Positions 1-19,277 of a stretch of 64,000 nt of DNA are shown here, in pieces; positions within the stretch are counted from its first letter, which is position 1, and each line of letters starts with the position of its first letter. A program made the position numbers and the translations under genes. Location: NCBI RefSeq assembly GCF_021869535.1, contig NW_026262581.1, forward strand, positions 96,100,001-96,164,000, in the 5' to 3' direction. The notes under the pieces were generated by a model that had not been told where the DNA came from, made no database searches, and saw nothing but the letters and a program-made list of their open reading frames with translations. The DNA comes from Mytilus californianus (lineage: Eukaryota).

Positions 1-1239
1 TAATTCAAAACCAAAGTTAAAATGAAAATTTCTACATGACTAAATACTTACATGGTGGATAAAAAAAAAAAAACAATAAAAGTTACTTGTTAACCTTCTT
101 TGAGGGTTACTTTTTGCAAGGCACAACCACATAAAGGACACATGAAGTTTTTGTGATCGGGAGATGAAAGGACAATTAATATAAAAACTTGAAACAAACA
201 GATTTGTGGTACCACAAATTTAACTAACATGGGAGATAACTCTTCATTTCAAAAAGACAATTTAAATAAAGTTATATGTAGTTTTTACATGTGAGAAATT
301 TGGAAAAGTAATTATACAATGTATTCTCAAATTTTATGTACTTTATGATTATGAAAACACTTTTTGAATAAATGACTGTCTTTTTCACACGAAAAATACT
401 CTGAGCACAGAAATACATGTGCAACAGTTTCAAAACAAAAGTTAAATGCACATTTTGTGTATGTGGTTTTATTGATTTTTTTTCAAAAAAGTCCATTTAA
501 CCACATATTTACCAAAACAAAAGACAGTATTTGTTTTAATCCATTATTCAGAGGAAAAATTGTATTTTAATATAATAATGACAAATATCTATCGAAACCA
601 TAACGTTTCTTGTAAAAGCATGTGAAGTTGAGCATGGTGAATATCACTTTCTTCGGGTGAATATGCTGTTGTATTCAAAATCCATTAATTCATATAGTAA
701 AAACTTAATAAAATAATACCAATATGGAATAAATACTACTATTCATGCTATTACTCTAGCTGTATATAATTCTAACATTATGATTGCAAAATGAGTAAAC
801 TGAGCAATAATATGATCGATAAAATAAAATTCAAATTCATATATTCCTTGCAAGTTTCTAAATTGCACTATAGAGTATAGTTATAGTATAGTCGAGTATT
901 AAGAACATTTACATATACTATATAGTACTGCACAGTCTGTTTATTTTGATATATTTATACTGAATACTGGGGATCGAGAGTAGGGACAAGGTCTATGATT
1001 GTCCTAATTATTATGACTCTTGGAGGACTAAAAAACTTTATTTAGCTTTAGCAGATTTCATATATTATGAACAATATATTATCTGGCATTATCTGGACAC
1101 TATGATTACCTGAAAGATCGTGTTAAGTTTTCATTATCAAGGACTAATATATATATTATTAATGTTTGTGTAGTTGTCCCTATTTTCATATTAGTTTAAA
1201 ATCTTACACTCTGAAGTTGATTTGTGGAAATTGTAATTG

Positions 1240-1314
1240 TTTACTGTGCTACTGGACGCCATATTTACAATTTACCTGTAATGACCTAAATAATTGACAC
1301 TTTACTAATCACAG
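1240..1314 (+). other. Possible non-coding first exon / promoter region of the CUB-like membrane protein gene
   Basis: cag|gtaaag donor at 1314/1315; clustered CAGGTA/TACCTG and TAATTG motifs at 1270-1430; the first coding exon (9046) starts with an acceptor, so an upstream exon must exist. The 5' boundary is a guess. Confidence 0.3.
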
Positions 1315-1948
1315 GTAAAGGTTTAACTAAATGATACCAAGTTAAAATACTGGTTTTCATTATCGTCATTATCCCTCTCACATGAAAAGAACAAATTGTA
1401 CAAGGGACCAGTAATATACCTGTTCAGGTAGAACTTCCGGGTTATCATTTGCTTAACTAGGAAAATGGTAAGAAATTGAATAATCCAAATAAGTTTTTAT
1501 ATGGAAAACATTCAATCGAATTGTAGAGAACTACTAACATTACCAACTGAGATAATAAAAGGTAGTAGAAAGTATGTTTGTACTGTTATATGTGAACCGA
1601 ATCAAATTAAAACTTTGGTATTCGTATTCATTATCAGAAATGAATTGTTTAATTACATCAATCTGTCAATTATTGACTGACTATGGGCAATTAGAAATAA
1701 TCCTAATTTTGAATATATATATATAATCTGGTACACATTACATGCCCTATACAAAGTTAATCCATAGCATACTGGCATACTCTCCCTGCAGGGACTTTCT
1801 ATACTAGCATATATATAGACTGTCCCTGTTCCCTGGTAGTTGATTTGCCCCATAAATAGGTTGATAATCTTTTTTTGTATTTATAACCAACAAGTGGTTG
1901 CTTGATATCTGTTATTTTTTTGTCAAACTGCAATTATGATGATATATG

Positions 1949-2085
1949 CAGGGCTGTCAAGTTTTCATGAAGCAAATGTGTGAGATTTGGCAAAAATTGT
2001 AAAGATCAAAGAGAAAAAACAATAAATCAAAGGAAAATGCTGCCAAATTAGCATGAAATTGCGTGAGTCTCACTTGACAGCACTG
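1949..2085. mobile_element. Small MITE with CAG termini (hAT-like)
   Basis: TIR cagggctgtcaag / cttgacagcactg (12/13 match); flanks tatatg / catatg (5/6), consistent with a 6-bp TSD. Confidence 0.55.
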
Positions 2086-2312
2086 CATATGTTTCTGGTG
2101 ACTGCCTTAATTAGTGATGTCACATAGGGTATTGGGTTGCTTTGCCCTTATCACCTTTTATAAAAATGAATAACAAACAAAACAAAAGTTTTTTACCTAC
2201 ATACAACATAACTTCTTAATTTTGTTTTAAGATGTACATGTTTTTCATAATAAAGTTTAAGAATTATACTGTTCATACAGTCTTCAATATCATCAACTTA
2301 TTTGAGGTCAAT

Positions 2313-2440
2313 TGTTCTCTCCGGACACTCCCACTTCCTCCACAGATATAAAGGACGTACAGCCACAATTTAGCCAATAGTGCTGAAACTTTCCCCATGA
2401 AAGTGGTGTTAAATACCAATAATCAATCAACCAATCAACT
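2313..2440 (+). mobile_element. 3' fragment of a V-domain-like SINE
   Basis: ttctctccggacactcccacttcctccac followed by gaaagtggtgttaaataccaataatcaatcaa tail; same layout as 21619-21868. Confidence 0.5.
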
Positions 2441-3057
2441 TATTTGTCTTATATATATGAAATATGAATGAATACTTTATTGAAGAAAGCATCAAGTATG
2501 CTATAATAGCAACGGAAACATATTGACAACAAGACAAATGATAAACAGCTGAGCAGAAAGCAATACTTAAAATCCATAATAAGAAAACAAGCAACAATTA
2601 GTGTGATTTGATTGATCCTGCTTATTTTATGTATTTACACTATTTCCTTATAAGTGAAACATTCGTAAATTTAAATAATTAATTCTGTAATTTTGTAGTG
2701 TTTTGCCTAGAACAATAACATGTTGGTTAAAAAGTAGGCCTAATTGATCTAAAGGCATACTAATAAAAAATGGTATTTGTTTTCAACACACTGCATATTT
2801 CAGTATTTGCATATATATATATATATATATATTCTCTAGTCATTTTAGTATATCTTCCTGTTTCAATGTTCATTTATAGTGTTCTACTACATAATTTGAT
2901 TGAAACATGTGAATTATAACAATAATCTAAATAATCTTCAAACCTGAATTTTAACTTTTAGATAGATACTAGTTTTTCACTCCTTTCTACAGATTCTTAA
3001 CAGCTATGTATAAACTGATCTTTATTCTTTAATCCTATTCCTAATATCAATATATAT

Positions 3058-3673
3058 ATTTTATTAAACTGGTGATATATACGATTTCCCATGAGAGGAC
3101 AGCCAGGTGGCGCTGTCCAAGGTCATACTTCAGAGCTTGAGGATCTAGTTGTAAATAAGGGTGGGAACAATTTCACAAGAAATTCCCAAGAGGTGGGCAT
3201 ATGAAATCTATATCACGAGTTTAATAAAATTATAATTAATCTTCAAATGTTTCGATTAATTGAAACATTTTATTTAACTGGTGATATATACGATTTCCCA
3301 TGAGATTTTAGAGCACAACTAGATCATCAATCCACTAAGAATTGTTGAAAAACCTTCTTTAGGCCAGGTTATTATCAATCAGTTCAAATAATTTTATCTT
3401 TTAATAAACATATATACATTTGTACATTAATGTCCATCATAACATTTCTTAAGAACACAATCATTCAACTATAGCTACTTGATGGTAAAATCTTTTGAGC
3501 TAAATTATTTTCATTGTCGGTAATAATTGTTTTATTATAAAATTTTTGAAAAGTTGTTGCTGACTTCCACCCTGCACTTTTCATAATAGTGTCTAATTTA
3601 AGTCCTTGGCCTAATGCAGCTGATGTTGATGCTGAACGACAACTATGTGGACCAAAACATTCAATGTTTATTC
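3058..3673 (-). mobile_element. DIRS1-like retroelement 3' end: tyrosine recombinase C-terminus (3465-3673) plus terminal repeat region
   Basis: Minus frame GINIECFGPHSCRSASTS...AGWKSATTFQKFY (HxxR, W, Y motifs); a ~35-bp motif occurs twice direct (3060-3094, 3268-3304) and once inverted (3208-3232). Confidence 0.85.
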
Positions 3674-4874
3674 CAGGGCTCACGCTAGCAGGCGACTGGG
3701 GCGACAAAGTCGCTTTCCCGTCCGTCACTTCGCTTTGCCCGACCGTCAAAAGCGATAACTAGTCGTCCTGTTATTCACTGTTATTCGCTTTCAGTCGCTT
3801 TCTTCATCGGCAATTTATATGTAAAGAAATTCGAACATAAATAATTTATTTCTTTAGAAAAGTGGTGAAAGCATTGACTTTACAGTTGGTTGTATTTTAT
3901 TTCATAAAGACAAATTATTTTGTATCACTTCCAGTACTTGTTACTCGAGAGTGTACATCAATTCATTCTAATTTTCGGCAACATAAGTATGTTACTTCAT
4001 TAGAACTTGATAAAAATTGTCTTTAGTTAATGTTTAATCCCCTTGTTGCATTAAAACGTCATATTTCTTTCCAAATAGCTTGTCAAACATCGTTTATACT
4101 TGTAAATTTTCTTCGTCCGCCATTGAAATATTTGTACGAACTACGAATTGGAGGCGGGATTCATCGGAAGCGGATCAGCTATGAACGAAATCTGTATTTT
4201 TACGATATTAACTACGGACACACGATTGCACTAAAGAATATTGATCCCAAAAGGAAAATTACGCATTCCACAAGCATTAGCAGACTTTTGGTTAGATCTA
4301 CTTGCTTAATGTATATATTTCCATGTATATGCATTGTTTTAATTTAATGATTAAAGTTGCTAAACTTTGTTAAATTTATATATCTTTTTAATGAAAAACA
4401 TTGAATTTCATAAACATGATAAACAGATTATTTTTTTAAATGTATTTTAATTGATATATTATACTTTCTTTTCCGTTTTAGTATAAAAAAAAGATCTTTT
4501 TAGTGTAATATTATTAGTTTGTAGTTTCTGACAAGAAGACAAATATAATTGTGTATCTAGAAATGATAAACTTAAACAACTTTGAATTTGATATTTGAAC
4601 TGTTACTTTAATTATACTCCGTTTGGTGAACCAACGCCTGTGTGAATCCTTTCGGTAGAGCCCATGAGTGTTACTTTAATTGTATACTCAGGTAAGAATT
4701 GAACAAAATAAAAAAATATAAGATACATATGGCCCTTTATATTATAGTAAAAAACCAAACATTGTAGCGCCACAAGCAAACAAGTACTTCTCTTTCAAAT
4801 CTCACCACTTCTCCTTATCAGTTTCAAAAAGAGAAGTCACTTCTCCCTATGATTCTGAAGTAGTGTGAGCCGTG
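3674..4874. mobile_element. Non-autonomous TIR DNA transposon (hAT-like, 6-bp TSD) inserted in the DIRS YR gene
   Basis: TIR cagggctcacgcta / tagtgtgagccgtg (12/14); ttattc duplicated at both ends; the YR frame resumes exactly across it (KSS-GINIE); subterminal TCGCTTT and ACTTCTC repeats. Confidence 0.8.
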
Positions 4875-5080
4875 TTATTCCAGAACTTTTCATAACAGTT
4901 TTTATCCATCTGGCAATGGTACTTTTGGTGACAGCTTTATAAGGTTTTACAGTAGAAACAAACACTTTTTGTTCTTTGTTCCGAAGAGTTTCTGTTTTTC
5001 TTACATATTCCTAATAAGTTCTCAAAATACACAATTTTTCATTGACAATATATCTTTCAAATACTAAAGGTTGCATATGT
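4875..5080 (-). pseudogene. DIRS1-like tyrosine recombinase, middle fragment
   Basis: HMQPLVFERYIVNEKLCILRTY*EYVRKTETLRNKEQKVFVSTVKPYKAVTKSTIARWIKTVMKSSG; one premature TAG at about 5011-5013. Confidence 0.85.
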
Positions 5081-5732
5081 AGAAAGCATTTGATAGAGAC
5101 TGTCTACTTTTTAAATTGAGAAAAATTGGTATTAGCGGTATATTTTAAAATTGTATTACTTCTTTATACAGTAATGTCAATTGTGCAGTCAGAGTAAATA
5201 ACTTTATGACATCCTTTTTTCCTGTTGCTCTTGGTGTAAAACAAGGCTGTGTTTTATCGCTGACTTTATTTTCTATCTATGTAAATGATTTAGTCTCAGA
5301 TATTAAAAAAGCAAATTGTGGTATTCAAATAGATGACATAATGGTCTCTATGTTATTATATGCTGATGACATTGCATTGATTGCACCTGATGCAGAGAAA
5401 CTGCAAAAGCAGTTGGACATTTTAAACAAGTGGTGTGAAAAGTGGAGATTAACTCTAAATAAAAACAAAACCAAAATTGTTCATTTTAGAAATAAATCTA
5501 TACAAAGAAGTAATTTTCAGTTCAAATGTGGTGAACTTTGTCTTGAATATGCAACTTGTTATAAATATCTTGGTGTACTTTTGAATGAATTTTCGGATTA
5601 TTCAATAATTGCCAAAGAACTGTATAAATCAGCTAATAGAGCTCTTGGTGTTATTAAAGCAAAATTTTGTAAAACTGGTGGTATGAATTTTGATGTATTT
5701 ACTAAATTATATGACACTTTAGTCAAACCCAT

Positions 5733-7675
5733 TTTTATACGACCGCAAAAATTAAAAATTTTTTGGTCGTATATTGGTATGACGTTGGCGTCGTCGTCGT
5801 CCGGCGTCGTCCGAAGACACATTGGTTTTCGCACTCTAACTTTAGTTTAAGTGAATGGATCTCCATGAAATTTTACCATAAGGTTCAATACCACGAAAGG
5901 AAGGTTGGGATTGATTTTGGGGGTTATGGTACCAACAGTTAAGGAATTAGGGGCCAAAAAGGGGCCAAAAATAAGCATTTTTGTAACTTTCAGACAATAA
6001 CTTGTGTGTAAGTGTATGGATCTCTCTGACATTGTACCACAAGGTTCCATATCACAAAGGGAAGGCTGTAATTGATTTTGGGGGTAATTGCCTCAAAATT
6101 TTAGGAATTAGGGGCAAAAAAAGGGGCAAAAAACAAGCATTTTTCTAGTTTCATGACAATAACTTGTGTGTAAGTGTTTGGATATTTCTGAAATTGTACT
6201 ACAAGGTTTCATATCACAAAGGGAAAGCTGGAATTGAGTTAGGGGGTAATTGCCTGAAACGTTTAGGAATTGGGGGCCAAAAATAAGCATTTTTCTAGTT
6301 CCAAGACAATAACTTGTGTTCAAGTGTATGGATCTCTCTGAAATTGTACTGCAAGGTACCATACCACAAAGGGAAGGCTGGGATTGAGTTTGGGGGTGAT
6401 GAATCATAAGGGGGTTCAAAAAATTTGGGGGATGGGGTGGATTTTTTTTTTTTTCTTTTTTTTTCTTTTTTTCCTTTTTTTCCTTTTTATTTCTTTTAAA
6501 ATTTTCCATTTTAAGTTGGTTATTTCTGATTTATATTTAAAAGCAAATAATAATGATATGGTAGGAGATACACACCAAACAGGATGTGTAAATTTTTATA
6601 TAATAAGTATTGTGCAATAGCAAGAAATTTTCAATTGCACAGTATTGCACAATAGCAAGAAATCTTCAATTGCACAGTATTGCGCAATAGCAAGAAATCT
6701 TCAATTGCACAGTATTGCGCAATAGCAAGAAATATCCAATAGCACAATATTGCACAATAGCAAGAAATTGTCAATTGTACAGTATTGCGCAATAGCAAGA
6801 AATATTCAATTGCACAGTATTGTGCAAAAGAAGATACTTCTTATAAATTGCTTATTTCTTGATCAATTTCAATGGGGTTTTATTCTTGAATTCTTGGGGT
6901 TCTTTAATATGCTGAATATAACCGTGTATTAAGTTTTTGCATTTTGGGCCCCGTTTTTAAATTGGTCCACATTGAGGTCCAAAGGGTCCAAAATTTAACT
7001 TTGTTTGATTTCATCAAAAATTGAATTATTGGGGTTCTTTGATATGCCGAATCTAACCGTGTATTTAGATTCTTAATTTTTGGTTCCGTTTTCAAATTGG
7101 TCTACATTAAGGTCCAAAGGGTCCAAAATTAAACTTAGTTTGATTTTAACAAAAATTGAATTTTTAGTGTTCTTTGATAAGCTGAATCTAAACATGTATT
7201 TAGATTTTTGATTATGGGCCCAGTTTTCAAGTTGGTCCAAATCAGGGTCCAAAATTAAACTTTGTTTGATTTCAACAAAAATTGAATATATGGGGTTCTT
7301 TGATATGCTGAATCTAACCATGTATTTAGATTTTTGGGCCCCGTTATCAACTTTGTCCACATTGAGGTCAAAAGGGTCCAAAATTAAACTTTGTTTGATT
7401 TCATCAAAAATTGAATTCTTGGGGTTCTTTGATATGCTGAATCTAACCATGTATTTAGATTTTGGATATTGGACCATAATAGGTGAATGTCCAATTTAAA
7501 ATTTTTAAGTTCTTAGACCACATTCATTCTGTGTCAGAAACCTATGCTGTGTCAAATATTTAATCACAATCCAAATTCAGAGCTGTATCAAGCTTGAATG
7601 TTGTGTCCATACTTGCCCCAACTGTTCAGGGTTCGACCTCTGCGGTCGTATCAAGCTGCGCCCTGCGGAGCATTT
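5733..7675 (+). mobile_element. Helentron-associated (HINE/DINE-1-like) non-autonomous element with three internal tandem arrays
   Basis: 11-bp subterminal IR atacgaccgca (5737) / tgcggtcgtat (7641); inner IR at 5763; 3' hairpin gctgcgccctgcggagc; inserted at TT with no TSD; same family at 55298 and 59144. Confidence 0.8.
6606..6830. repeat. 35-bp minisatellite, about 6.5 copies
   Basis: agtattgcgcaatagcaagaaatcttcaattgcac recurs at 6606, 6641, 6676, 6711, 6746, 6781 and 6816. Confidence 0.9.
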
Positions 7676-8740
7676 TATTACATATGCTTCTGGTGTATGG
7701 GGCATTAATATACATAATTGTATAAATAGTTTGCAAAACAATGCTTGTAAATTTTTCTTAGGCTTAAGCAAGAGAAGCAGCAATCTAGCTGCTAGAGGTG
7801 ATATGGGTTTTTTATCAGGTGATGCACTACTAAAAGTTGAAGTTTTTAAACTATGGAATCGTCTTAAATGTGACAATACCAGTAATATATGTAAAAAGGT
7901 TCATACCTGGGCGATTAGAAGAAAATCGTCATGGGATTATAGAGTTTTACAGTTAGCTCGTAAATATAGTTTGATTCAAAATGTAGAAGATGAAATTAAT
8001 ATGAGTAATGTATGGGATTCTATACAAACTTTTGAAAAAGAATCTTGGCATCATGAAGTATGGAATGATAAAAATAATGTCAATGGTAATAAATTAAGAT
8101 TTTATAGATTGTTTAAAACTTGTATTGGTACGGAGCCTTATGTAAAGGTAGTTAATAATAGATGCCACCGACGTATTTTGTCATTTTTTAGAGCTGGTTC
8201 GTTACAACTTAAAGTTGAAACAGGTCGATATGCTAGACCACCAGAACCTCTACAAGACCGTTTATGTATTTTTTGTGATAGTTGCCAAATTGAAGATGAA
8301 AAACACTTTCTTTTTAATTGTTGTTTTTACTCTGATATCAGACATGAATTATATGCCAAAGCCTGTCTTTTAAATGTTGATTTTGAGTATTTATGCGATA
8401 TTGAAAAACTTCGTTATCTTATGTGTAATGAGAATATCGGTTCCTCTTTTAGCTAGTTCCCTTTATTATATGTTTTACCGACGTTAACATGTCATCTAGA
8501 AATTATATATGTTTTTTATTTTTTTTTTTATTTACGAAATACTTTTTAAATGTAACAAAGTTGTCCTTTTATGTATGTATTAGATGTTTGTTTTAATGAT
8601 TATTAAGTGTCTCATAAGTCATTTTTGGCTGGCATCCTTTTACTAAATGTTAGGTTCTTATGACTTTATGTGTATATATATAGATACTGTAATGGATGGT
8701 GACACTTTAATAAAATAAATCTTATCTTATCTTATCTTAT

Positions 8741-10146: not shown

Positions 10147-11522
10147 TTTTTGTCTCGCCTGCGACAAAAGTCGCAGAAAGTGAGACATAGGTATTACTAT
10201 CCGGCGACGGCGGCGTAAACTATTTGTATAAAGCTTTATATTTCAGAAGGTAGAAGACCTGGATGCTTCATACTTTGTATGCAGATACCTTATGTTACGA
10301 ACTTTCTGTCTGTCATATGTCCAATGTCCTTGACCTTATTTTCATGGTTCAGCGACTGCTTGAAAAAAAAGTTTAGTTTTTTTGTTATGTAAATTTCTCA
10401 CTTATTATGAGTAATAGGATAACTATATTTGGTATATGGGTTCCTTGCAACGTCTACATGTCCATCAGACAGGGTTCACCTGACCTCAGCCTCATTTCAT
10501 GGATCAGTGATCAAGGTTAAAGTTACGTGATTAGGTCCGTTTCTCAGATACTACAAGCAGTAGGTCAGCTATATGTGGTGTATGGAATGATTATAAGGGA
10601 TACATGTCAGTCTGGCAGGTTTCATCTGACCTTGACCTCATTTTCACGGTTCATTGGTCAATGTTAAGTTTTTGTGTTTTGGTCTGTTTTTCTAATACTA
10701 TAAGCCATTGGTCAACTATATTTGGTGTATGGAATGATTGTAAGGTGTACATGTCTGTCTGGCAGGTGTCATTTGTCCTTGACCTATTTTCATGGTTCAT
10801 TGGTCAATGTTAAGTTTTTGTGTTTTGGTCTGTTTTTCTAATACTATAAGCAATAGGTCAACTATATTTGGTGTATGGAATGATTGTAAGGTGTACATGT
10901 CTGACTGGCAGGTGTCATTTGTCCTTGACCTCATTTTCATGGTTCATTGGTCAATGTTAAGTTTTTGTGTTTTGGTCTGTTTTTCTAATACTATAAGCAA
11001 TAGGTCAACTATATTTGGTGTATGGAATGATTGTAAGGTGTACATGTCTGTCTGGCAGGTGTCATTTGTCCTTGACCTCATTTTCATGGTTCATTGGTCA
11101 AAGTTAAGATTTTGAGTTTCGGTCTTTTTTTCTAATACTATATGCAATAGGTCAACTATATTTGGTGTATGGAAATAATTTATGATCTTTATGTCAGTCG
11201 CGCAGGTTTTATTTCACCTTGACCTCATTTTCACAGTTCATTACTCAGTGTTAAGTTTTTGTGTTTTGGTCTGTTTTTCTTAAACTATAAGCAATAGGTC
11301 AAATATATTTGTTGTATGGAAGAATTGTTAGCTGTACATGCCTGCCTGTCATGGTTCATCTGACCTTGACCTCATTTTCATGGTTCATTGGTCAATGTTT
11401 AGTTTTCTTGGTTAATGTTAAGTTTATGTGACAGTTGTAAGAAAGCTTTATATTTAGGACTATCAACATAATATCAATGATTAGTAAAGAAGGCGAGACA
11501 TTTCAGCATGTGCACTCTTGTT
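10147..11522 (+). mobile_element. HINE-like element with 147-bp tandem array
   Basis: Subterminal IR tgtctcgcct (10151) / aggcgagaca (11491); T-run start; short 3' stem; unit marker at 10422, 10568, 10715, 10861, 11008, 11155 and 11302. Confidence 0.8.
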
Positions 11523-12148: not shown

Positions 12149-12994
12149 GTAAGAAGTTGTACTGTCAGTACTGACAAAAGTGGCAACTATAAAACTATGA
12201 CTTCAAATTCTGAAACTCCATAAATATTAGCATAGACATATATGTCTTTTATTTAATTATTCGGTAAAAATTGCATAAGGTGCAATCTAATCCCTATTAT
12301 CACTGACTGGTTAGGTATATTTAGGCCATCTTTAGTTCTCCATGCCCATGGTAAGCAATTATTTATACTATATACTCAGATATTTAATTTATAACATGAT
12401 GTATATGAATATAAACATACTAAATCAACAAAAAAAGTTGTTGAAAGTCATGCATGGACTATGAATCTATCAGTTCTACCTATATAGCTACAATTAGGGA
12501 CATTCTGCATCTTTTGTCATTAAAAGACCAAAAGCAATCTGCACATGGCAATGCAAAAATTCTGCCCTTACCCAGCTTACCTTCTTTTTTCACATGTTCA
12601 TTGTGAGTTGAACTTTGTAAAATATATGACAAATTACAATTTTGATCCAGTTTCAGTTTTTTTTTTAAATGAAAATTTGGTGGTTGGAGCATGACATGGT
12701 GCCCTATGAACATAAATTCATGTCTTGTTAATGTCCTGTAGTCAAAATATATCAACCCCTTTTTAGATGAATGGGATGCACTGATCTTTCAATTCTTAAA
12801 AAGAAAGATATATTTTTGTACTTAACAAGATGTCAAGCTGGAGATGTATTTTGTTCTTTTAAATTGGAGATAACAATGTAAAAACCTAGCACATCTGTTA
12901 CATAATCATCATTCCATATAAGTATCCAGTATGGAAAAGAACTAACTTGTAATTAAGTTAATCCTAAACTATATTAAAGTTTTTTTCTTTTCAG

Positions 12995-13133
12995 TTTACA
13001 GCATCGAAAGGATCTCAACCAAATACACAGATAAAATATACAACATCAGGAAATTCTGTCACATTCTATTTTACTAGAAGTTCTCCTGCTAATTTGGATT
13101 ATAATATAGAAATAGGAGTCATTGTTATTCCAG
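12995..13133 (+). CDS. CUB-like membrane protein, coding exon 3
   Basis: tttcag acceptor, gtatgt donor; FTASKGSQPNTQIKYTTSGNSVTFYFTRSSPANLDYNIEIGVIVIP (TSGNSVTFYF resembles the CUB C-terminal strands). Confidence 0.85.
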
Positions 13134-13655
13134 GTATGTAGATTGAAATTAAGAATGTAAAGCTGTACTAAGCTGTTTTGGAAAGATTAAATTACCATTC
13201 GTAGTTCTTATTGCCCCAGCAAAAAAAAAATACACAAATTAGTATATTTTTTACATGAGTTATTTATTTAGAAGAATACTTTAAAACATCCATGCTCAAA
13301 TTTAGATGTTTTGAATGATCTTGAATGTGTTATAATCCAAATAATATGTTACGTGTTGATATGTGTTTGTATTGTTGTATCAGCAACTTCTCTTGAACAA
13401 GTGACTAGATTTCAATGAAACTTTAATAATGTCATTATGCACTTGCATTTTTGTTTTTATGTCATTGATTCTTACAACTAATTGTGAAAAGTAGCTGTCA
13501 CCATGGTGATTCAGGAAGATTTACTACCGAATTGCAATCATACCACATCTTATTTTCATAAACTACCCTTATAAAGATCAGTGCTTTAATCATTTATGTA
13601 AAATTTCATACACAATGTTTTACTCTGTGTTAGGGTAAAATGCACTGTTATGCAC

Positions 13656-14642
13656 TTTATTCAAACCTGTTGTATGTAGTCAGTCTGTATAATAGTCTCA
13701 TATTGTAATTTTCTTGTAGTCTCTAATCTTTTCTGAAATCTCGTTAGGTGTAAATATTTTCTGTAGTTTAATAAGGTGGTTGTTTATTATTTGTGTCTGA
13801 GTGGTATGCAAAAACTTTTATAAATGTATAGTGTCAGTGAACAAAACATTGTAGGTCACCAATGGCAGGCTTACTAAAAATTTTGAGTTATATTTATTTA
13901 CCTATTCCAAAGAGCAAAGTTTCATAATGTAAGCCTTCCATTGATGAAATAAAAAGTTTAATGATCACATCAACCTGTATTTTACAGCTGCAATTTAGGT
14001 AAATTATTTTCTGTGTGTATCGATAAGAAGTCCTGATTATTTCCTGTGTGTATTGATGAGAAGTCCTAATGTCCAATATTTAGTTCAAGTAAACTCTCCT
14101 GATTGAGCAAATCTCAATTAAAGTCAAGACAGCAACCCACATATTTAAGCATTGTACACCAATTACCAGCTTCAAACACAAATAAACCAAATTTTACATA
14201 AGGGATATCTGTGTGTTAACCAAAACATAATACTTGCAAGTCACACTGGCTTAAAGCAGGAAGATATGTTAGAATAATAATTTTATTATAAACAATCAAA
14301 TCAGTTTGGCCCTTGAGAAACACTCAGCATACAAAATAAAATTTTGAGTTCCTGCCTGAGCAGGTCAGCTTGCAACCTTCAGTGTAAGGAAGAACCTGCC
14401 TGCCCGACAATGCGCCAGCCAGGAAGTGGAGTGTCTCCACAGAGAGGATGAGAATAGACATCTCATCTGCAGCCGGGTTGTGCAAGGTCTGCATCAGGGG
14501 ATAGCCCATGTGGTGCTATTACAAGTAGTAAGTAGCAGGGTCTATCAAACTGGCGCTGGAATAATTTTGATCAAATTTGTCCCCGAAATGCTTGGGGATG
14601 AATGAAATTTTAGAAATGACCAGTGATAAAATTCCATCAAGG
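13656..14642. repeat. B2 split direct repeat, 987 bp (copy of 15189-16175)
   Basis: Constant 1533-bp offset; identical ORFs in the track (13894/15427 and 14324/15857); no mismatch noticed by eye. Confidence 0.95.
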
Positions 14643-15189
14643 AAATATAATAAGAAAAGAAAAATAAATATATCACTAGTAAAATTGCTGAAATGTTTCT
14701 CTTGTCATGAAACATTATTGAAGGTGTTAGGAAGGTGGATGGTGGGTGGTAAATTAAATAATAGCACTGTAAACTATATCAACTAGTCAGACTGCTATGA
14801 ACCTAGAAAGTGATTATACAAAGACCATGCATATGGCTTCACACACAGATTGGGTACATCAATCATATAGGGGGAGGAGACTGACCTCACTTGGCCTTCA
14901 GAATGATATACTAATTGCTGTGCAATAAATTTTATAAGATCTGTTATCATAATCTGCATTTCCTCACCAAGAGTAATTGCTTGTGACATATATCTGATTA
15001 GGAAAAGATTAATGTTTTTCCTGTTGAGACTCCATAACCTCAAAATGTCAAATACCATAGAAATTATTCTCAAGCTAACACAGGTGGTCAATGATGTTAA
15101 ATGTATCAATGATGTCAGCATCTTTCACCAGATATTAATTGTACTCTTGTTTGTATAAACAAAACTTATATTACATATAAGTAAAATAT
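14643..15189. repeat. A2 split direct repeat; 14969-15189 is duplicated at 17586-17806 (truncated A1)
   Basis: aagagtaattgcttgtg...taagtaaaatat present at both sites, offset 2617. Confidence 0.9.
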
Positions 15190-16175
15190 TTATTCAAACC
15201 TGTTGTATGTAGTCAGTCTGTATAATAGTCTCATATTGTAATTTTCTTGTAGTCTCTAATCTTTTCTGAAATCTCGTTAGGTGTAAATATTTTCTGTAGT
15301 TTAATAAGGTGGTTGTTTATTATTTGTGTCTGAGTGGTATGCAAAAACTTTTATAAATGTATAGTGTCAGTGAACAAAACATTGTAGGTCACCAATGGCA
15401 GGCTTACTAAAAATTTTGAGTTATATTTATTTACCTATTCCAAAGAGCAAAGTTTCATAATGTAAGCCTTCCATTGATGAAATAAAAAGTTTAATGATCA
15501 CATCAACCTGTATTTTACAGCTGCAATTTAGGTAAATTATTTTCTGTGTGTATCGATAAGAAGTCCTGATTATTTCCTGTGTGTATTGATGAGAAGTCCT
15601 AATGTCCAATATTTAGTTCAAGTAAACTCTCCTGATTGAGCAAATCTCAATTAAAGTCAAGACAGCAACCCACATATTTAAGCATTGTACACCAATTACC
15701 AGCTTCAAACACAAATAAACCAAATTTTACATAAGGGATATCTGTGTGTTAACCAAAACATAATACTTGCAAGTCACACTGGCTTAAAGCAGGAAGATAT
15801 GTTAGAATAATAATTTTATTATAAACAATCAAATCAGTTTGGCCCTTGAGAAACACTCAGCATACAAAATAAAATTTTGAGTTCCTGCCTGAGCAGGTCA
15901 GCTTGCAACCTTCAGTGTAAGGAAGAACCTGCCTGCCCGACAATGCGCCAGCCAGGAAGTGGAGTGTCTCCACAGAGAGGATGAGAATAGACATCTCATC
16001 TGCAGCCGGGTTGTGCAAGGTCTGCATCAGGGGATAGCCCATGTGGTGCTATTACAAGTAGTAAGTAGCAGGGTCTATCAAACTGGCGCTGGAATAATTT
16101 TGATCAAATTTGTCCCCGAAATGCTTGGGGATGAATGAAATTTTAGAAATGACCAGTGATAAAATTCCATCAAGG
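15189..16175. repeat. B1 split direct repeat, 987 bp
   Basis: Copy of 13656-14642; the two diverge immediately after ccatcaagg. Confidence 0.95.
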
Positions 16176-16367
16176 TCCAAAAACACAGATGGAACAGCTG
16201 CGTGCCCCCAAGGATTTAGGAGTGTGGACTTATTCACCTTCAATAAAGTCATGAGAAAAGAAAAAAAGAAAAAATAATATAATAATAAAATACACCTGTT
16301 GACATATAAAATCAAAATAATAAAAATACATTTTGTAATGATAGATCAAATATCATGATGCTTTGTG

Positions 16368-17381
16368 TTAAGAATTACCTAACAAATCTTGTGCATACTT
16401 AATTGAAGAAGATGACACTCTTATATACCTGCAGTAACTATCAGAGGACCAGCGTCCTAGTACTTTGACCAAATGGTCTTCAATATGTGCTTTACCTGCA
16501 GTTGTGGCAGCTCCAATGCGTAGGCTATGACCATTATAGTGATCGGGATTGAAGCCACATAAACTAAGTACATGTTTAATGCAATTAATGAAATAATTTC
16601 TTTCTAAGGCTAAAGAATTTTGTGAGATAAAAAATGGATCAGATGGGAGATTAGGAATTAGATTTTTTCGAATTTGAAAATATTTGATTAAGATTTTATA
16701 AGGACAAATCTGATTTTGTACTTTATGAAGTTGAATATCTATACCCTTCCTAAAAGGATCTGTTTTTGACTGTTTCAGTTTCAAAACGGTCATATCTTTA
16801 TGAAATGTAATATCTCCAATACATAAATTTACAGATGAGTCATATTGGTTGGCATTCAAAACTGTGAATTCTCCGCATCTCATAAAGCCATAAAAACCTA
16901 CTGTACAGGCTGTTTCTAGCATTAAATCAATAAAAGGGGTAAACACCCCATGTCTAAGACGAAATATGATTTTTTCTAAAATCTCAAAAGTAATAGGTAA
17001 TCTCTTATGGTTCCTAGGTTTTTGAAGTTTTTTGACAGAGTTCAAAATGTAAGTGAGTCTATCTAAAGGTGTGTTGTTGTCAGATTCTAAAGGGTCTTTA
17101 CAACTATTCTGCAAATACCTGTATCTTATTCCACATAAATACAATTTAATGGTAGAATACTGTAGTTTTAAGAAATGGAAACAATATGCTATAAAGAAAA
17201 TTAAAATGTCTTCTGAAATAGGAGGTAAGAAATCATATTTGAAATTGTTCAGCAACATAAATCTCTCAAAATGTTTGAAACCAGTTTCATATGCACTCTT
17301 TGTTTTGCTTGCAATAGCAACGTCCCAAAGTTGATTAACTATTTTGTTCAGGACCACATTACTTCTGAATTGGGTGGGCAC
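16368..17381 (-). CDS. Tyrosine recombinase (phage-integrase family) of the Ngaro-type element, 337 aa, intact
   Basis: N-terminal SAM-like region (TKSAYETGFKHF), GFMRCGEF (R), LKQSKTDPF (K), GHSLRIGAAT (HxxR), GRWSSDSYCRY (W, Y). Confidence 0.95.
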   Translation of the reverse strand: MPTQFRSNVVLNKIVNQLWDVAIASKTKSAYETGFKHFERFMLLNNFKYDFLPPISEDILIFFIAYCFHFLKLQYSTIKLYLCGIRYRYLQNSCKDPLESDNNTPLDRLTYILNSVKKLQKPRNHKRLPITFEILEKIIFRLRHGVFTPFIDLMLETACTVGFYGFMRCGEFTVLNANQYDSSVNLCIGDITFHKDMTVLKLKQSKTDPFRKGIDIQLHKVQNQICPYKILIKYFQIRKNLIPNLPSDPFFISQNSLALERNYFINCIKHVLSLCGFNPDHYNGHSLRIGAATTAGKAHIEDHLVKVLGRWSSDSYCRYIRVSSSSIKYAQDLLGNS

Positions 17382-17585
17382 TGATGAGGTTTTAGTGCTG
17401 CATTTGGAGCCAGTCTGCGGAAACGGTTTATCTGTAAACGAGACAAAGCGTCACTTATTTCATTTTCATATCCTGGTACATGTTTCGCACTAAAATGAAA
17501 GTTATATTTACAGGCACACCATGTTAATTGTCGCATTAATTTCATGATCTGCAAGCATTTAGAGCGACCTTTTTTCACTATTGCA
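17348..17585 (-). pseudogene. C-terminal remnant of DIRS-group RNase H
   Basis: AIVKKGRSKCLQIMKLMRQLTW...AKHVPGYENEISDALSR, the typical DIRS/Ngaro RNase H HVPG..N..AD.LSR motif; 5' end fused directly to A1. Confidence 0.85.
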
Positions 17586-17854
17586 AAGAGTAATTGCTTG
17601 TGACATATATCTGATTAGGAAAAGATTAATGTTTTTCCTGTTGAGACTCCATAACCTCAAAATGTCAAATACCATAGAAATTATTCTCAAGCTAACACAG
17701 GTGGTCAATGATGTTAAATGTATCAATGATGTCAGCATCTTTCACCAGATATTAATTGTACTCTTGTTTGTATAAACAAAACTTATATTACATATAAGTA
17801 AAATATATAATACATGTACAGGGAATTCAAAATGTATTTTTTTTCTAATTTCAG

Positions 17855-18244
17855 GGGATCCTACCAGCCAAGATGAATGTAGAACTGGGAATGAATATGG
17901 CTGCAATTATTACGGCTATAAACAGGTTATTGATAAAGAAACAGTTATTGGTATTGTAGGTGGCATTTTTGGGCTGATTGTTTTCATAGTTATACCAATC
18001 ATTGTTATTTGCTGTTATCGAAGGAGTAAAGGGGTTAACAAAAAGTGGGATGAATTCAAACTTCATGATACAGTAACAAACACTGCAGCTGATATTCACA
18101 ATTCTAATGCAAGCTTAACAACAACAAAATCTAAAAAAGGTCCATGGACATCCCAGAGTTCCAGAGTACCATATTCTGATGGAAAGAGATCTTATGGGAG
18201 AGGGAGCAGATATAGTGATGGTGGAGAAAGTGAATTTAGTGCAA
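17855..18244 (+). CDS. CUB-like membrane protein, coding exon 4 (TM helix)
   Basis: aatttcag acceptor, gtaggt donor; DPTSQDECRTGNEYGC...VIGIVGGIFGLIVFIVIPIIVICCYRRSK; phase 1 to 1. Missed by the ORF track. Confidence 0.85.
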
Positions 18245-19277
18245 GTAGGTTAAATATATAAGTTTGTTAAATATAGAGTGGATATATTACAATCTTCTTG
18301 AAACAACTATGTAGCAAGATATGATGTTAGCCATCACAAACAGAAAGTGTTTCTAAAGTCAAAATAAAGAAAATTATTTTTCTCGGGAACTACAGATCAC
18401 TTAGATACTAAAATTTAGTATTAAACATCAAGTAAGCATGCTATACCATGTGAAGTAATTTTAAGATATTCTATTGAGCTGTCTGCTGTAAACCTGTCTG
18501 GTTCCAGCTGAATCATTTTCACAGGGAACATCACCCACCCTTTTTGTGTAAATGTTCTGTCCTTTTTCTTGTTATCTTGGCTTCCTGCTCTTCTCATTGC
18601 ATCACCCTGTCCTTATATTGAGCTGCCCTTTCCTTCCTTTATTTCAACAAAATTTGTCAATACAGTACTTGAAATTTTACTATATTCACTGAACTGACCA
18701 AAGTTAACTTTAATTTTCTTGCCTTATACTAATTTAGTCTTCTGCAAAATTAGGTATTATTGTAACTGATGTTTTGTTGTTTGCATTCTGATATAAGTAC
18801 ATTTTTGGTCTGGTTTCTCTTGTTTGTTTTTCATTATATAATTTGTTATTCCACCTTTTGAGATGCTAATAAAGGAAGGCTCAGAACTTCAAAGCTACTT
18901 TAACCAAGCTACATTTTTGTTGAGAAGTTTGGAATAAACACGCATATTATGTATCTGATGAGTCAAATTTGTAATGAACTAGAAAAAAGATGAATTGAAA
19001 AAATGACAAAAGATTTGACATCTACTGTATTCAAACAGAAAGTGTAGAGAGGGCAATTAACATCCATTAACAAGATACTGACTTAAGGACAAACAGGTTT
19101 ACATGTCTTATTTATAATGCATGAAGTAAAGTACAGAGGTGCTAGAAACTGTTTATTATTTTTTTTCATCTCTAATAGTCAAGATAACTATTTAAAAATA
19201 TTTTTAAATTTTCATTGTTCATTTCATTACAGTTATACTGACTATAAACTTTATGTTGACCAATTTTTTTCTTTCAG

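What the first reader, a model, noticed from the sequence alone, without database searches (positions are those of the whole stretch)
13656..17806. Young Ngaro/PAT-type YR retroelement with split direct repeats and an internal copy of its own circle junction
Seen: on the minus strand the order is A1 - RNase H tail - YR - B1 - A2 - B2. The B copies are 987 bp with no visible difference, and the A copies match over 221 bp. The B1/A2 join (gtaaaata-t-ttattc) is exactly the right end (gtaaaatat, 17806) fused to the left end (tttattc, 13656), with 1 nt of overlap and no TSD. Known: this is the diagnostic layout of Ngaro/PAT elements, which replicate via circular DNA integrated by the YR. Inference: a recent insertion from a family with roughly 1-kb B repeats. 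It fills 4.15 kb of a 4.72-kb intron and ends 48 bp from the host TM exon acceptor, so it may be polymorphic and affect splicing.
Basis: partly seen in the sequence, partly recalled or inferred. Interest (0 to 1): 0.75.

Follow-up and report, generated by a model that had tools for sequence, protein, structure and literature searches.

The report
Polymorphic gutted Ngaro retrotransposon in mussel intron
This is a very recent, internally deleted copy of a Ngaro-type tyrosine-recombinase retrotransposon sitting backwards in an intron of a mussel membrane-protein gene. Other individuals of the species carry the exact empty site, so it is an ordinary but cleanly documented insertion polymorphism.

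Summary
B copies 13656-14642 and 15189-16175 are identical over 987 bp, and A copies 14969-15189 and 17586-17806 are identical over 221 bp.

The same genome holds three long copies of the family, about 7.4 kb each, at other loci. Their layout is A1(440)-gag-RT/RNase H-YR-B1(987)-A2(440)-107 bp-B2(987). With no methyltransferase, no integrase and no inverted repeats, the family is Ngaro, not PAT or DIRS1.

The window copy is a one-off derivative. A 3,251-bp deletion removed half of A1, gag, RT and most of RNase H. The recombinase ORF is intact, and the deletion junction occurs nowhere else in the genome.

RNA reads confirm the host intron 13134-17854. The insertion is therefore real, young, free of target-site duplication, and polymorphic.

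The "1-nt overlap" is a target base, not a fixed feature: 8 of 19 family 5' ends lack it. An effect on splicing is untested.

This scan has already noted Ngaro elements in this genome. It is a new member of a known kind and of modest interest.

The parts
13656..17806 (-). Whole insertion: internally deleted Ngaro-type YR retrotransposon copy. The element proper is 13656-17805 (4,150 bp). Base 17806 is shared with, and probably belongs to, the target.
   Evidence: The empty-allele contigs skip 4,150 bp with 1 ambiguous base. The first base varies at 8 of 19 family 5' ends.
17586..17806 (-). A1, truncated: the first 221 of 440 bp of the A repeat. The deletion junction lies at 17585/17586.
   Evidence: A 121-bp probe across the junction matches in full only here in the 1.65-Gb genome.
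17348..17578 (-). Remnant of the RT/RNase H frame, covering the last ~75 codons of the RNase H domain. It ends with the usual C-terminal aspartate motif.
   Evidence: ORF; alignment to the uninterrupted frame of a long copy. The nearest Atlas clusters for the C-terminal 159 aa of the long-copy frame carry RVT_3 / RT_RNaseH.
16368..17381 (-). Intact tyrosine recombinase ORF (337 aa from GTG). The open frame extends upstream to about 17450 and overlaps the RNase H frame.
   Evidence: Protein identical to that of long copy L031. 665 homologues were found, many named Tyr recombinase domain-containing. The family profile hits XerD/XerH. R168, K206, H285, R288, W311 and Y319 are present. The Pfam Phage_integrase hit is only sub-threshold.
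16176..16367 (-). Unique non-coding spacer between the YR stop and B1, containing a T-run whose length varies between copies.
15189..16175 (-). B1 repeat (987 bp). Its first ~300 nt are GC-richer and fold stably. It ends in an AATAAA motif.
   Evidence: Fold z-score is -3.2. This part is ~89-90% conserved across subfamilies whose other parts are 77-85% alike.
14750..15189 (-). A2 repeat, complete (440 bp). The B1|A2 junction at 15189 is the internal copy of the joined element ends.
14643..14749 (-). 107-bp unique spacer (X') between A2 and B2, present in all long and solo copies.
13656..14642 (-). B2 repeat (987 bp), identical to B1. The identity includes a substitution private to this copy (13813, matching 15346 in B1).
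13134..17854 (+). Host intron (4,721 bp; about 570 bp without the element). The host gene is on the + strand, so the element is antisense to it.
   Evidence: RNA joint 13130->17852 (cut +3), GT..AG, 8 reads. Splice sites were read.
12995..13133 (+). Host exon upstream of the intron.
   Evidence: RNA reads continue into the preceding exon at 12994, and the donor lies at 13133/13134.
17855..18244 (+). Host exon encoding a single transmembrane helix followed by basic residues.
   Evidence: Translation. RNA reads join 18244-18247 to the next exon. Pfam gives only weak TM-type hits.

Best explanation
The stretch is one copy of a young Ngaro-type tyrosine-recombinase retrotransposon family of a Mytilus mussel.

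**The complete element (7,407 bp).** It reads A1(440)-gag-like ORF-RT/RNase H-YR-B1(987)-A2(440)-107 bp-B2(987).

**How it is thought to replicate (taken from the literature on DIRS/Ngaro elements, not shown here).** The element is transcribed and reverse-transcribed. The internal B1|A2 junction serves as the template that brings the two cDNA ends together. The encoded recombinase then crosses the joined molecule into the chromosome at the B-end/A-start point, leaving no target-site duplication.

**What is shown here.**
- The ends are constant at more than 15 independent loci.
- There is no duplication of the target.
- An exact filled/empty allele pair exists for this locus.
- Within every copy B1 equals B2, even though B differs between copies. 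This indicates that both B copies are made from one template in each cycle.

**The window copy.** It carries a unique 3,251-bp deletion with 1 nt of microhomology, running from position 221 of A1 into RNase H. It has no gag or RT and cannot copy itself. It keeps an intact YR frame and all 3' repeats.

**When the deletion arose.** It arose either by template switching during the reverse transcription that produced this copy (about 55%) or after insertion (about 45%).

**Location and population status.** The copy landed antisense in a 570-bp intron, 48 bp upstream of the acceptor of the TM exon. It is still segregating in the population.
For: - **Repeats.** They are exact.
- **Family census in the same genome.** There are three long copies more than 99.5% identical to the window copy, one A-I-B form, and many solo A-X'-B units. 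All have different flanks and the same termini.
- **Domains.** RVT_1 scores 1.9e-8, with retroviral RTs as hits in the PDB. The C-terminus is RNase H-like. The YR family profile hits XerD/XerH and all catalytic residues are present. The gag-like ORF has a CCHC knuckle.
- **Exclusions.** No methyltransferase, no integrase, no inverted repeats.
- **Deletion.** It was mapped, and its junction is unique in the genome.
- **Host intron and empty allele.** RNA reads splice 13134-17854. DNA contigs of two studies join 13655 to 17806. The window copy's private variants at 16875 and 15346 are absent from all three DNA runs.
- **Repeat homogeneity.** B1 equals B2 in 4 of 4 copies (apart from a 79-bp duplication in one B2), while B differs between copies by 1-3 substitutions.
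- **Literature definition of Ngaro.** PMC8547959, PMC9210276 and PMC4157794 define the layout. PMC7192593 shows that the internal junction region is needed for DIRS-1 retrotransposition.
Against: - No phylogeny against named Ngaro, PAT and DIRS reference sequences could be made, so family membership rests on architecture.
- Pfam recognises the YR only below threshold (16.5 bits against a cut-off of 27.1).
- The filled allele and the deletion junction are supported only by the assembly itself. None of the listed contigs of the three DNA runs crosses them, and most contigs were not listed.
- The replication steps (circle, junction-templated end joining) are inferred from other elements.
- The identity of B1 and B2 could also come from gene conversion.
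Confidence: 0.9

Rival explanations
1. Assembly artefact. The duplicated A and B blocks, or the whole insertion, come from a mis-join of repeat-containing reads, and the locus is really empty.
For: Two DNA runs show only the empty join. No listed contig crosses the flank/element junctions or the deletion junction.
Against: The same A/B order occurs at three other loci with other flanks. The insertion borders fall exactly on the family's canonical termini. The deletion joins non-homologous points with 1 nt of microhomology, which repeat collapse does not produce. The copy carries private substitutions of its own, one of them in both B copies.
Confidence: 0.03
2. It is a PAT-like or DIRS1-like element rather than Ngaro.
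For: PAT elements also have split direct repeats (PMC4157794, PMC9210276). No reference-anchored tree was made.
Against: PAT and DIRS1 elements encode a methyltransferase domain. Here the RT/RNase H frame is 543 aa and runs straight into the YR frame, leaving no room for one, and Pfam finds none. The internal repeats lie downstream of the YR, as in Ngaro. There are no inverted terminal repeats.
Confidence: 0.04
3. The empty allele results from precise recombinase-mediated excision of the element, not from chromosomes that never received it.
For: The copy keeps an intact YR frame and both ends. The empty site is exact to the base.
Against: An exact empty site is equally expected for a never-inserted allele. 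Excision has not been shown for any Ngaro element. The private variants of this copy are absent from three other runs, as expected for a rare new insertion. In run X5 the empty allele carries its own linked variant at 17836.
Confidence: 0.05
4. An LTR retrotransposon or nested/tandem arrangement, in which A-X'-B is a 1.5-kb LTR and the structure arose from nested insertions or unequal recombination.
For: Solo A-X'-B units greatly outnumber long copies, as solo LTRs do.
Against: No integrase is encoded and no TSD is present. The 5' end is A alone, not A-X'-B. The same order recurs at independent loci. Isolated AB repeats are already described for Ngaro elements (PMC8547959).
Confidence: 0.02

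Closest known systems
Ngaro superfamily of YR retrotransposons (Ngaro1 of zebrafish; Ngaro elements of sea urchins, fungi and Cafeteria; reported as abundant in the mollusc Lottia)
   Same: [quoted passage not shown] No methyltransferase, no integrase, no TSD. Overlapping ORFs. Isolated AB units scattered in the genome (PMC8547959, PMC9210276, PMC4157794).
   Different: B repeats are long (987 bp), and a 107-bp unique spacer separates A2 from B2. There is no SGNH hydrolase ORF. This particular copy lacks gag, RT and most of RNase H. Phylogenetic placement was not tested.
PAT-like elements (Panagrellus PAT, Toc, Kangaroo)
   Same: Split direct repeats and a YR in place of an integrase.
   Different: PAT elements carry a methyltransferase domain and place the internal repeats differently. 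Neither is seen here.
DIRS-1 of Dictyostelium
   Same: An internal sequence that reproduces the joined termini. In DIRS-1 this is the ICR, shown to be indispensable for retrotransposition (PMC7192593). Integration is TSD-free, with a short sequence shared between junction and target.
   Different: DIRS-1 has inverted terminal repeats and a methyltransferase. The shared sequence proposed for DIRS elements is a trinucleotide. Here at most a weak bias is seen: one base, often A, and T at -3.
Internally deleted (non-autonomous) retroelement copies and solo LTRs
   Same: A deletion with minimal microhomology that removes coding capacity but keeps the ends. Recombination between direct repeats leaves solo units (A-X'-B) or A-I-B forms.
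   Different: The surviving gene is the recombinase, and the repeats are split rather than terminal.

Membership tests
Ngaro (YR retrotransposon) | Encodes RT, RNase H and a tyrosine recombinase in that order, with no DDE integrase | tested here: met
   Long copies: RVT_1 and PDB retroviral RT hits, RNase H-like C-terminus, YR profile hits XerD/XerH with the catalytic residues present, and no integrase hit. The window copy itself keeps only the RNase H tail and the YR.
Ngaro (YR retrotransposon) | Split direct repeats A1-[ORFs]-B1A2-B2, with internal repeats downstream of the YR | tested here: met
   for the window copy; for three long copies at other loci.
Ngaro (YR retrotransposon) | No methyltransferase domain | tested here: met
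   No Pfam hit. The frames fill the internal region without spare coding space.
Ngaro (YR retrotransposon) | Insertion without target-site duplication | tested here: met
   Flanks of more than 10 copies; exact empty allele.
Ngaro (YR retrotransposon) | RT and YR fall in the Ngaro clade in a tree with named references | not tested
   No named Ngaro, PAT or DIRS reference sequences could be obtained with the tools. The homologues found are unnamed mollusc proteins.
PAT-like | Methyltransferase domain after RT/RNase H | tested here: not met
DIRS1-like | Inverted terminal repeats plus an internal complementary region | tested here: not met
   No inverted repeats of 30 nt or more at the ends.
LTR retrotransposon | Identical LTRs at both ends, DDE integrase, 4-6 bp TSD | tested here: not met

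The most novel reading that the evidence does not exclude
The gutted copy, which keeps only the recombinase gene and the complete set of end and junction repeats, is handled as DNA by its own YR. It would be excised and re-inserted, or release 1.5-kb A-X'-B circles that seed the many solo units. That would make it a living intermediate between a Ngaro retrotransposon and a Crypton-like DNA transposon. The empty alleles would then include excision products.
Probability: 0.03. Interest if true: 0.8.

Novelty: new member of a known kind. Interest (0 to 1): 0.3.

Why it matters
Ngaro integration has never been studied experimentally. This locus offers a natural filled/empty allele pair resolved to the base. 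The surrounding family has near-identical copies and repeat variants that track each copy. Together these support TSD-free recombination at the joined ends and regeneration of both B repeats from one template.

For mussel genomics, it is a concrete example of a segregating 4.15-kb intronic insertion lying 48 bp from a splice acceptor. It could serve as a marker and as a test of how such insertions affect splicing.

It does not reveal a new kind of element.

Tried and rejected
- **Splicing as the origin of the deletion.** The deleted segment starts next to a donor-like motif and ends next to an acceptor-like motif. However, neither of the two possible placements of the junction gives GT..AG borders, so this was rejected.
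- **Rfam scan of the element.** It found nothing meaningful, only one sub-threshold chance hit.
- **Pfam on host exons.** The exons were searched one by one by reference, and only weak TM-type hits came back.
- **Intron flank next to the insertion.** It is not a repeat in the assembly, so the element did not target another transposon.
- The tally was redone from locus references.
- **Two paper look-ups failed twice each** on a too-short search term and were repeated without it.
- **No consensus, repaired frame or reconstructed element was made.** Copies were only compared and described.
- **Read data limits.** The reads could not show the genotype of the RNA-run animal or the zygosity of the DNA-run animals, because contigs show presence, not absence.
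Full report
**1. Observation**

- B2 13656-14642 equals B1 15189-16175 over 987 bp with no mismatch.
- A2 14969-15189 equals A1 17586-17806 over 221 bp with no mismatch.
- B1 and A2 share the single base 15189.
- Outside these blocks similarity ends at once.

On the minus strand the order is A1, a 76-codon ORF (17348-17578), a 337-codon ORF (16368-17381), B1, A2, 326 further bases, then B2. Perfect repeats of this length are far beyond chance.

**2. The family**

A search of the window's own 1.65-Gb assembly with the element found copies at other loci that are nearly identical from element position 221 onward. Each has an extra A-like block about 3 kb further upstream.

After these regions were fetched, one long copy (L031:1387-8793, minus strand) measured 7,407 bp:

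| Part | Position in the long copy |
|---|---|
| A1 | 1-440 |
| Internal region | 441-4887 |
| B1 | 4888-5874 |
| A2 | 5874-6313 |
| Unique spacer | 6314-6420 (107 bp) |
| B2 | 6421-7407 |

A1 equals A2 and B1 equals B2 within this copy.

Two more long copies (L032, L033) have the same order; L033 carries a 79-bp tandem duplication in B2. L034 has the form A-internal-B. Many loci hold only A-spacer-B, a unit of 1,534 bp.

Junction probes give a rough census:

| Junction probed | Loci found |
|---|---|
| A-to-internal | 4 at 98% or more (plus 2 partial or divergent) |
| B\|A internal | 6 (4 at 100%, 2 at 92-93%) |
| A-spacer-B | at least 40 scored, out of 235 candidates |

All copies have different flanks. 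All start and end with the same short terminal motifs and show no target-site duplication. The repeat layout is therefore a property of the family, not of this assembly locus.

**3. Coding content**

The internal region of the long copies holds three frames.
- **A 543-codon gag-like frame.** It contains a CCHC zinc knuckle.
- **An RT/RNase H frame.** It matches Pfam RVT_1 at 1.9e-8 to 3.1e-8 and retroviral and foamy-virus RTs in the PDB. Its C-terminal 159 residues are closest to protein clusters carrying RVT_3 and RT_RNaseH, with a score of 0.97.
- **The recombinase frame.** It overlaps the previous frame by about 100 nt.

Coding integrity differs between the long copies. Some have all three long frames open; others carry frameshifts or stops. 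I only describe this and made no repaired or consensus version.

Evidence that the third frame is a tyrosine recombinase:
- It has 665 homologues, mostly in Mytilus, scallops, oysters and abalone. Many are labelled Tyr recombinase domain-containing protein.
- A 26-sequence profile hits XerD and XerH across the catalytic box.
- The window protein carries R168, K206, H285, R288, W311 and Y319.
- Pfam alone gives only a sub-threshold Phage_integrase hit.

No methyltransferase, integrase or hydrolase is found, and there is no spare coding room for one.

**4. The window copy**

Compared with the long copies, it lacks 3,251 bp. The deletion runs from position 221/222 of A1 to inside RNase H, and one base of microhomology sits at the junction.
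- This explains why the A match is only 221 bp.
- It also explains the "extra" 326 bp: these are the rest of A2 (219 bp) plus the 107-bp spacer.
- A 121-bp probe across the junction matches in full only here. Every other copy breaks at the junction.

The recombinase protein is identical to that of L031. In the 2.4-kb shared unit the copy has three private substitutions and one T-run length change. One of the substitutions lies in B and is present in both B1 and B2.

In all four copies examined, B1 and B2 carry no substitution differences (L033's B2 additionally has the 79-bp duplication), while B differs between copies by 1-3 substitutions. This is what is expected if both B copies are made from one template at each round of copying, as with LTRs. 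Gene conversion is the alternative explanation.

With zero differences over 1,207 compared bases, the insertion is young. Under assumed rates of 1-5e-9 per site per year, the 95% upper bound is about 0.25-1.2 million years. The rates are my assumption.

**5. Host gene and polymorphism**

The host gene is on the plus strand, so the element is antisense to it.
- The exon 12995-13133 ends at a GT donor.
- The exon beginning at 17855 encodes a single TM helix followed by basic residues.

Public reads were laid on 12900-18300.
- **RNA run X21:** 8 reads from 7 start points skip 4,721 bases with GT..AG borders. This confirms the intron 13134-17854.
- **DNA runs X1 and X5:** these come from different samples and studies with the same species label, and their flanks are more than 99.5% identical to the window. 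One contig in each passes directly from 13655 to 17806, skipping 4,150 bases with one ambiguous base.
- **Private variants:** those at 16875 and 15346 are absent from the contigs of X1, X5 and X10. This fits a rare insertion, though contigs can drop rare variants.
- **Limits:** no listed contig crosses the filled junctions, so the filled allele rests on the assembly. The genotype of the RNA-run animal is unknown, so the effect on splicing is untested.

The 48 bases left between the element and the acceptor keep the host polypyrimidine tract.

**6. The junction base and target choice**

Across 19 genuine 5' ends of this and related subfamilies, the first base is A in 11, T in 4, G in 3 and C in 1. 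All 3' ends and all internal junctions are constant.
- The first base is therefore best read as target-derived.
- The element proper is then 4,150 bp (13656-17805).
- The "1-nt overlap" reflects a preference, not a rule (P about 0.03 for A enrichment).

Two weak target biases appear in the flanks:
- T three bases upstream, in 15 of 19 ends.
- C just downstream, in 8 of 16 ends (P about 0.002, uncorrected).

The upstream bias makes the left target side resemble the last bases of B. This would fit the short junction/target identity proposed for DIRS elements (PMC7192593). The sample is small and mixes subfamilies.

**7. Mechanism**

Shown here:
- The architecture of the family.
- Constant ends and no target-site duplication.
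- An exact empty site.
- B1 and B2 homogeneous within each copy.
- An internal deletion that removes the replication genes.

Inferred from the literature on DIRS/Ngaro (PMC7192593, PMC8547959, PMC9210276):
- Transcription and reverse transcription of the element.
- Use of the internal B1|A2 junction to bring the cDNA ends together.
- Recombinase-mediated crossing of the joined molecule into the chromosome.

The window copy cannot copy itself. Whether it was born deleted through template switching, or was deleted after insertion, is open. I put this at roughly 55:45. The reasoning is that it is very young and that at least one of its private changes predates insertion.

Solo A-spacer-B units and the A-internal-B form are the products expected from recombination between A1/A2 and B1/B2. 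The former are already described for Ngaro (PMC8547959).

**8. Comparison and classification**

By the published structural criteria (PMC4157794, PMC9210276) this is Ngaro:
- It has RT/RNase H and a YR.
- Its split direct repeats have the internal pair after the YR.
- It has no methyltransferase.

PAT and DIRS1 each fail a defining feature. A tree against named references could not be made.

**9. Organism**

Two RNA runs that hold a small share of the stretch's words are labelled mollusc metagenome. The best homologues are from Mytilus. Contig C99 of this assembly has the same length, 132,162,296 bases, as the longest contig on record for a Mytilus californianus protein. The genome is therefore probably that species; this is an inference.

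**10. Earlier notes of this scan**

These notes already describe Ngaro-type elements in this genome, a conserved folded GC-rich 3' region, and the gag/RT deletion of this very copy.

I checked the last in full and the second in part. The first ~300 nt of B fold with z -3.2. They are about 89-90% conserved across subfamilies whose other parts are 77-85% alike.

**11. Verdict**

It is a well-documented ordinary case: a new member of a known kind, of modest interest.

Noticed in passing
window 15860-16175 and 14327-14642 (minus strand): The GC-richer first ~300 nt of the B repeat fold stably (z -3.2). They are ~89-90% conserved in subfamilies whose coding parts are only 77-85% alike, and they show the highest contig depth in all DNA runs.
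   Followed up: partly
L031, L032, L033 and the window copy: B1 and B2 have no substitution differences within each copy, yet B differs between copies by 1-3 substitutions. All three private B substitutions seen occur in both B copies of their element.
   Followed up: yes
19 family 5' ends and 16 family 3' ends (loci L001-L046): Weak target bias: T at three bases upstream in 15 of 19 ends, and C immediately downstream in 8 of 16. The first 'element' base is variable and so comes from the target.
   Followed up: partly
L033:7553-8618: One long copy has a 79-bp tandem duplication inside B2 (B positions 63-141 repeated).
   Followed up: no
L034:1420-7277; L007:1501-3039; L008:1501-3035: Two derived forms of the family exist: A-internal-B (5.86 kb, without A2-spacer-B2) and solo A-spacer-B units (1,534 bp). 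The solo units outnumber long copies by more than ten to one.
   Followed up: partly
long copies, overlap of the RT/RNase H and YR frames (L033:4743-4842): The recombinase frame has no start codon near its beginning. It overlaps the RT/RNase H frame by about 100 nt in the -1 frame, which suggests expression by frameshifting or as a fusion.
   Followed up: no
window 10406-11406: A tandem array of 147-bp units (6.8 copies, 85% matches) in the intergenic or intronic DNA upstream of the host exons.
   Followed up: no
window 17836: In DNA run X5 the empty allele is linked to an A>T variant 30 bp from the insertion point. A second, reference-like allele is also present at lower depth, so two haplotypes occur in that sample.
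   Followed up: no
window 8001-8453 (+): An open frame of about 150 codons within the nested transposon stack that another finding on this window covers. It was not examined.
   Followed up: no
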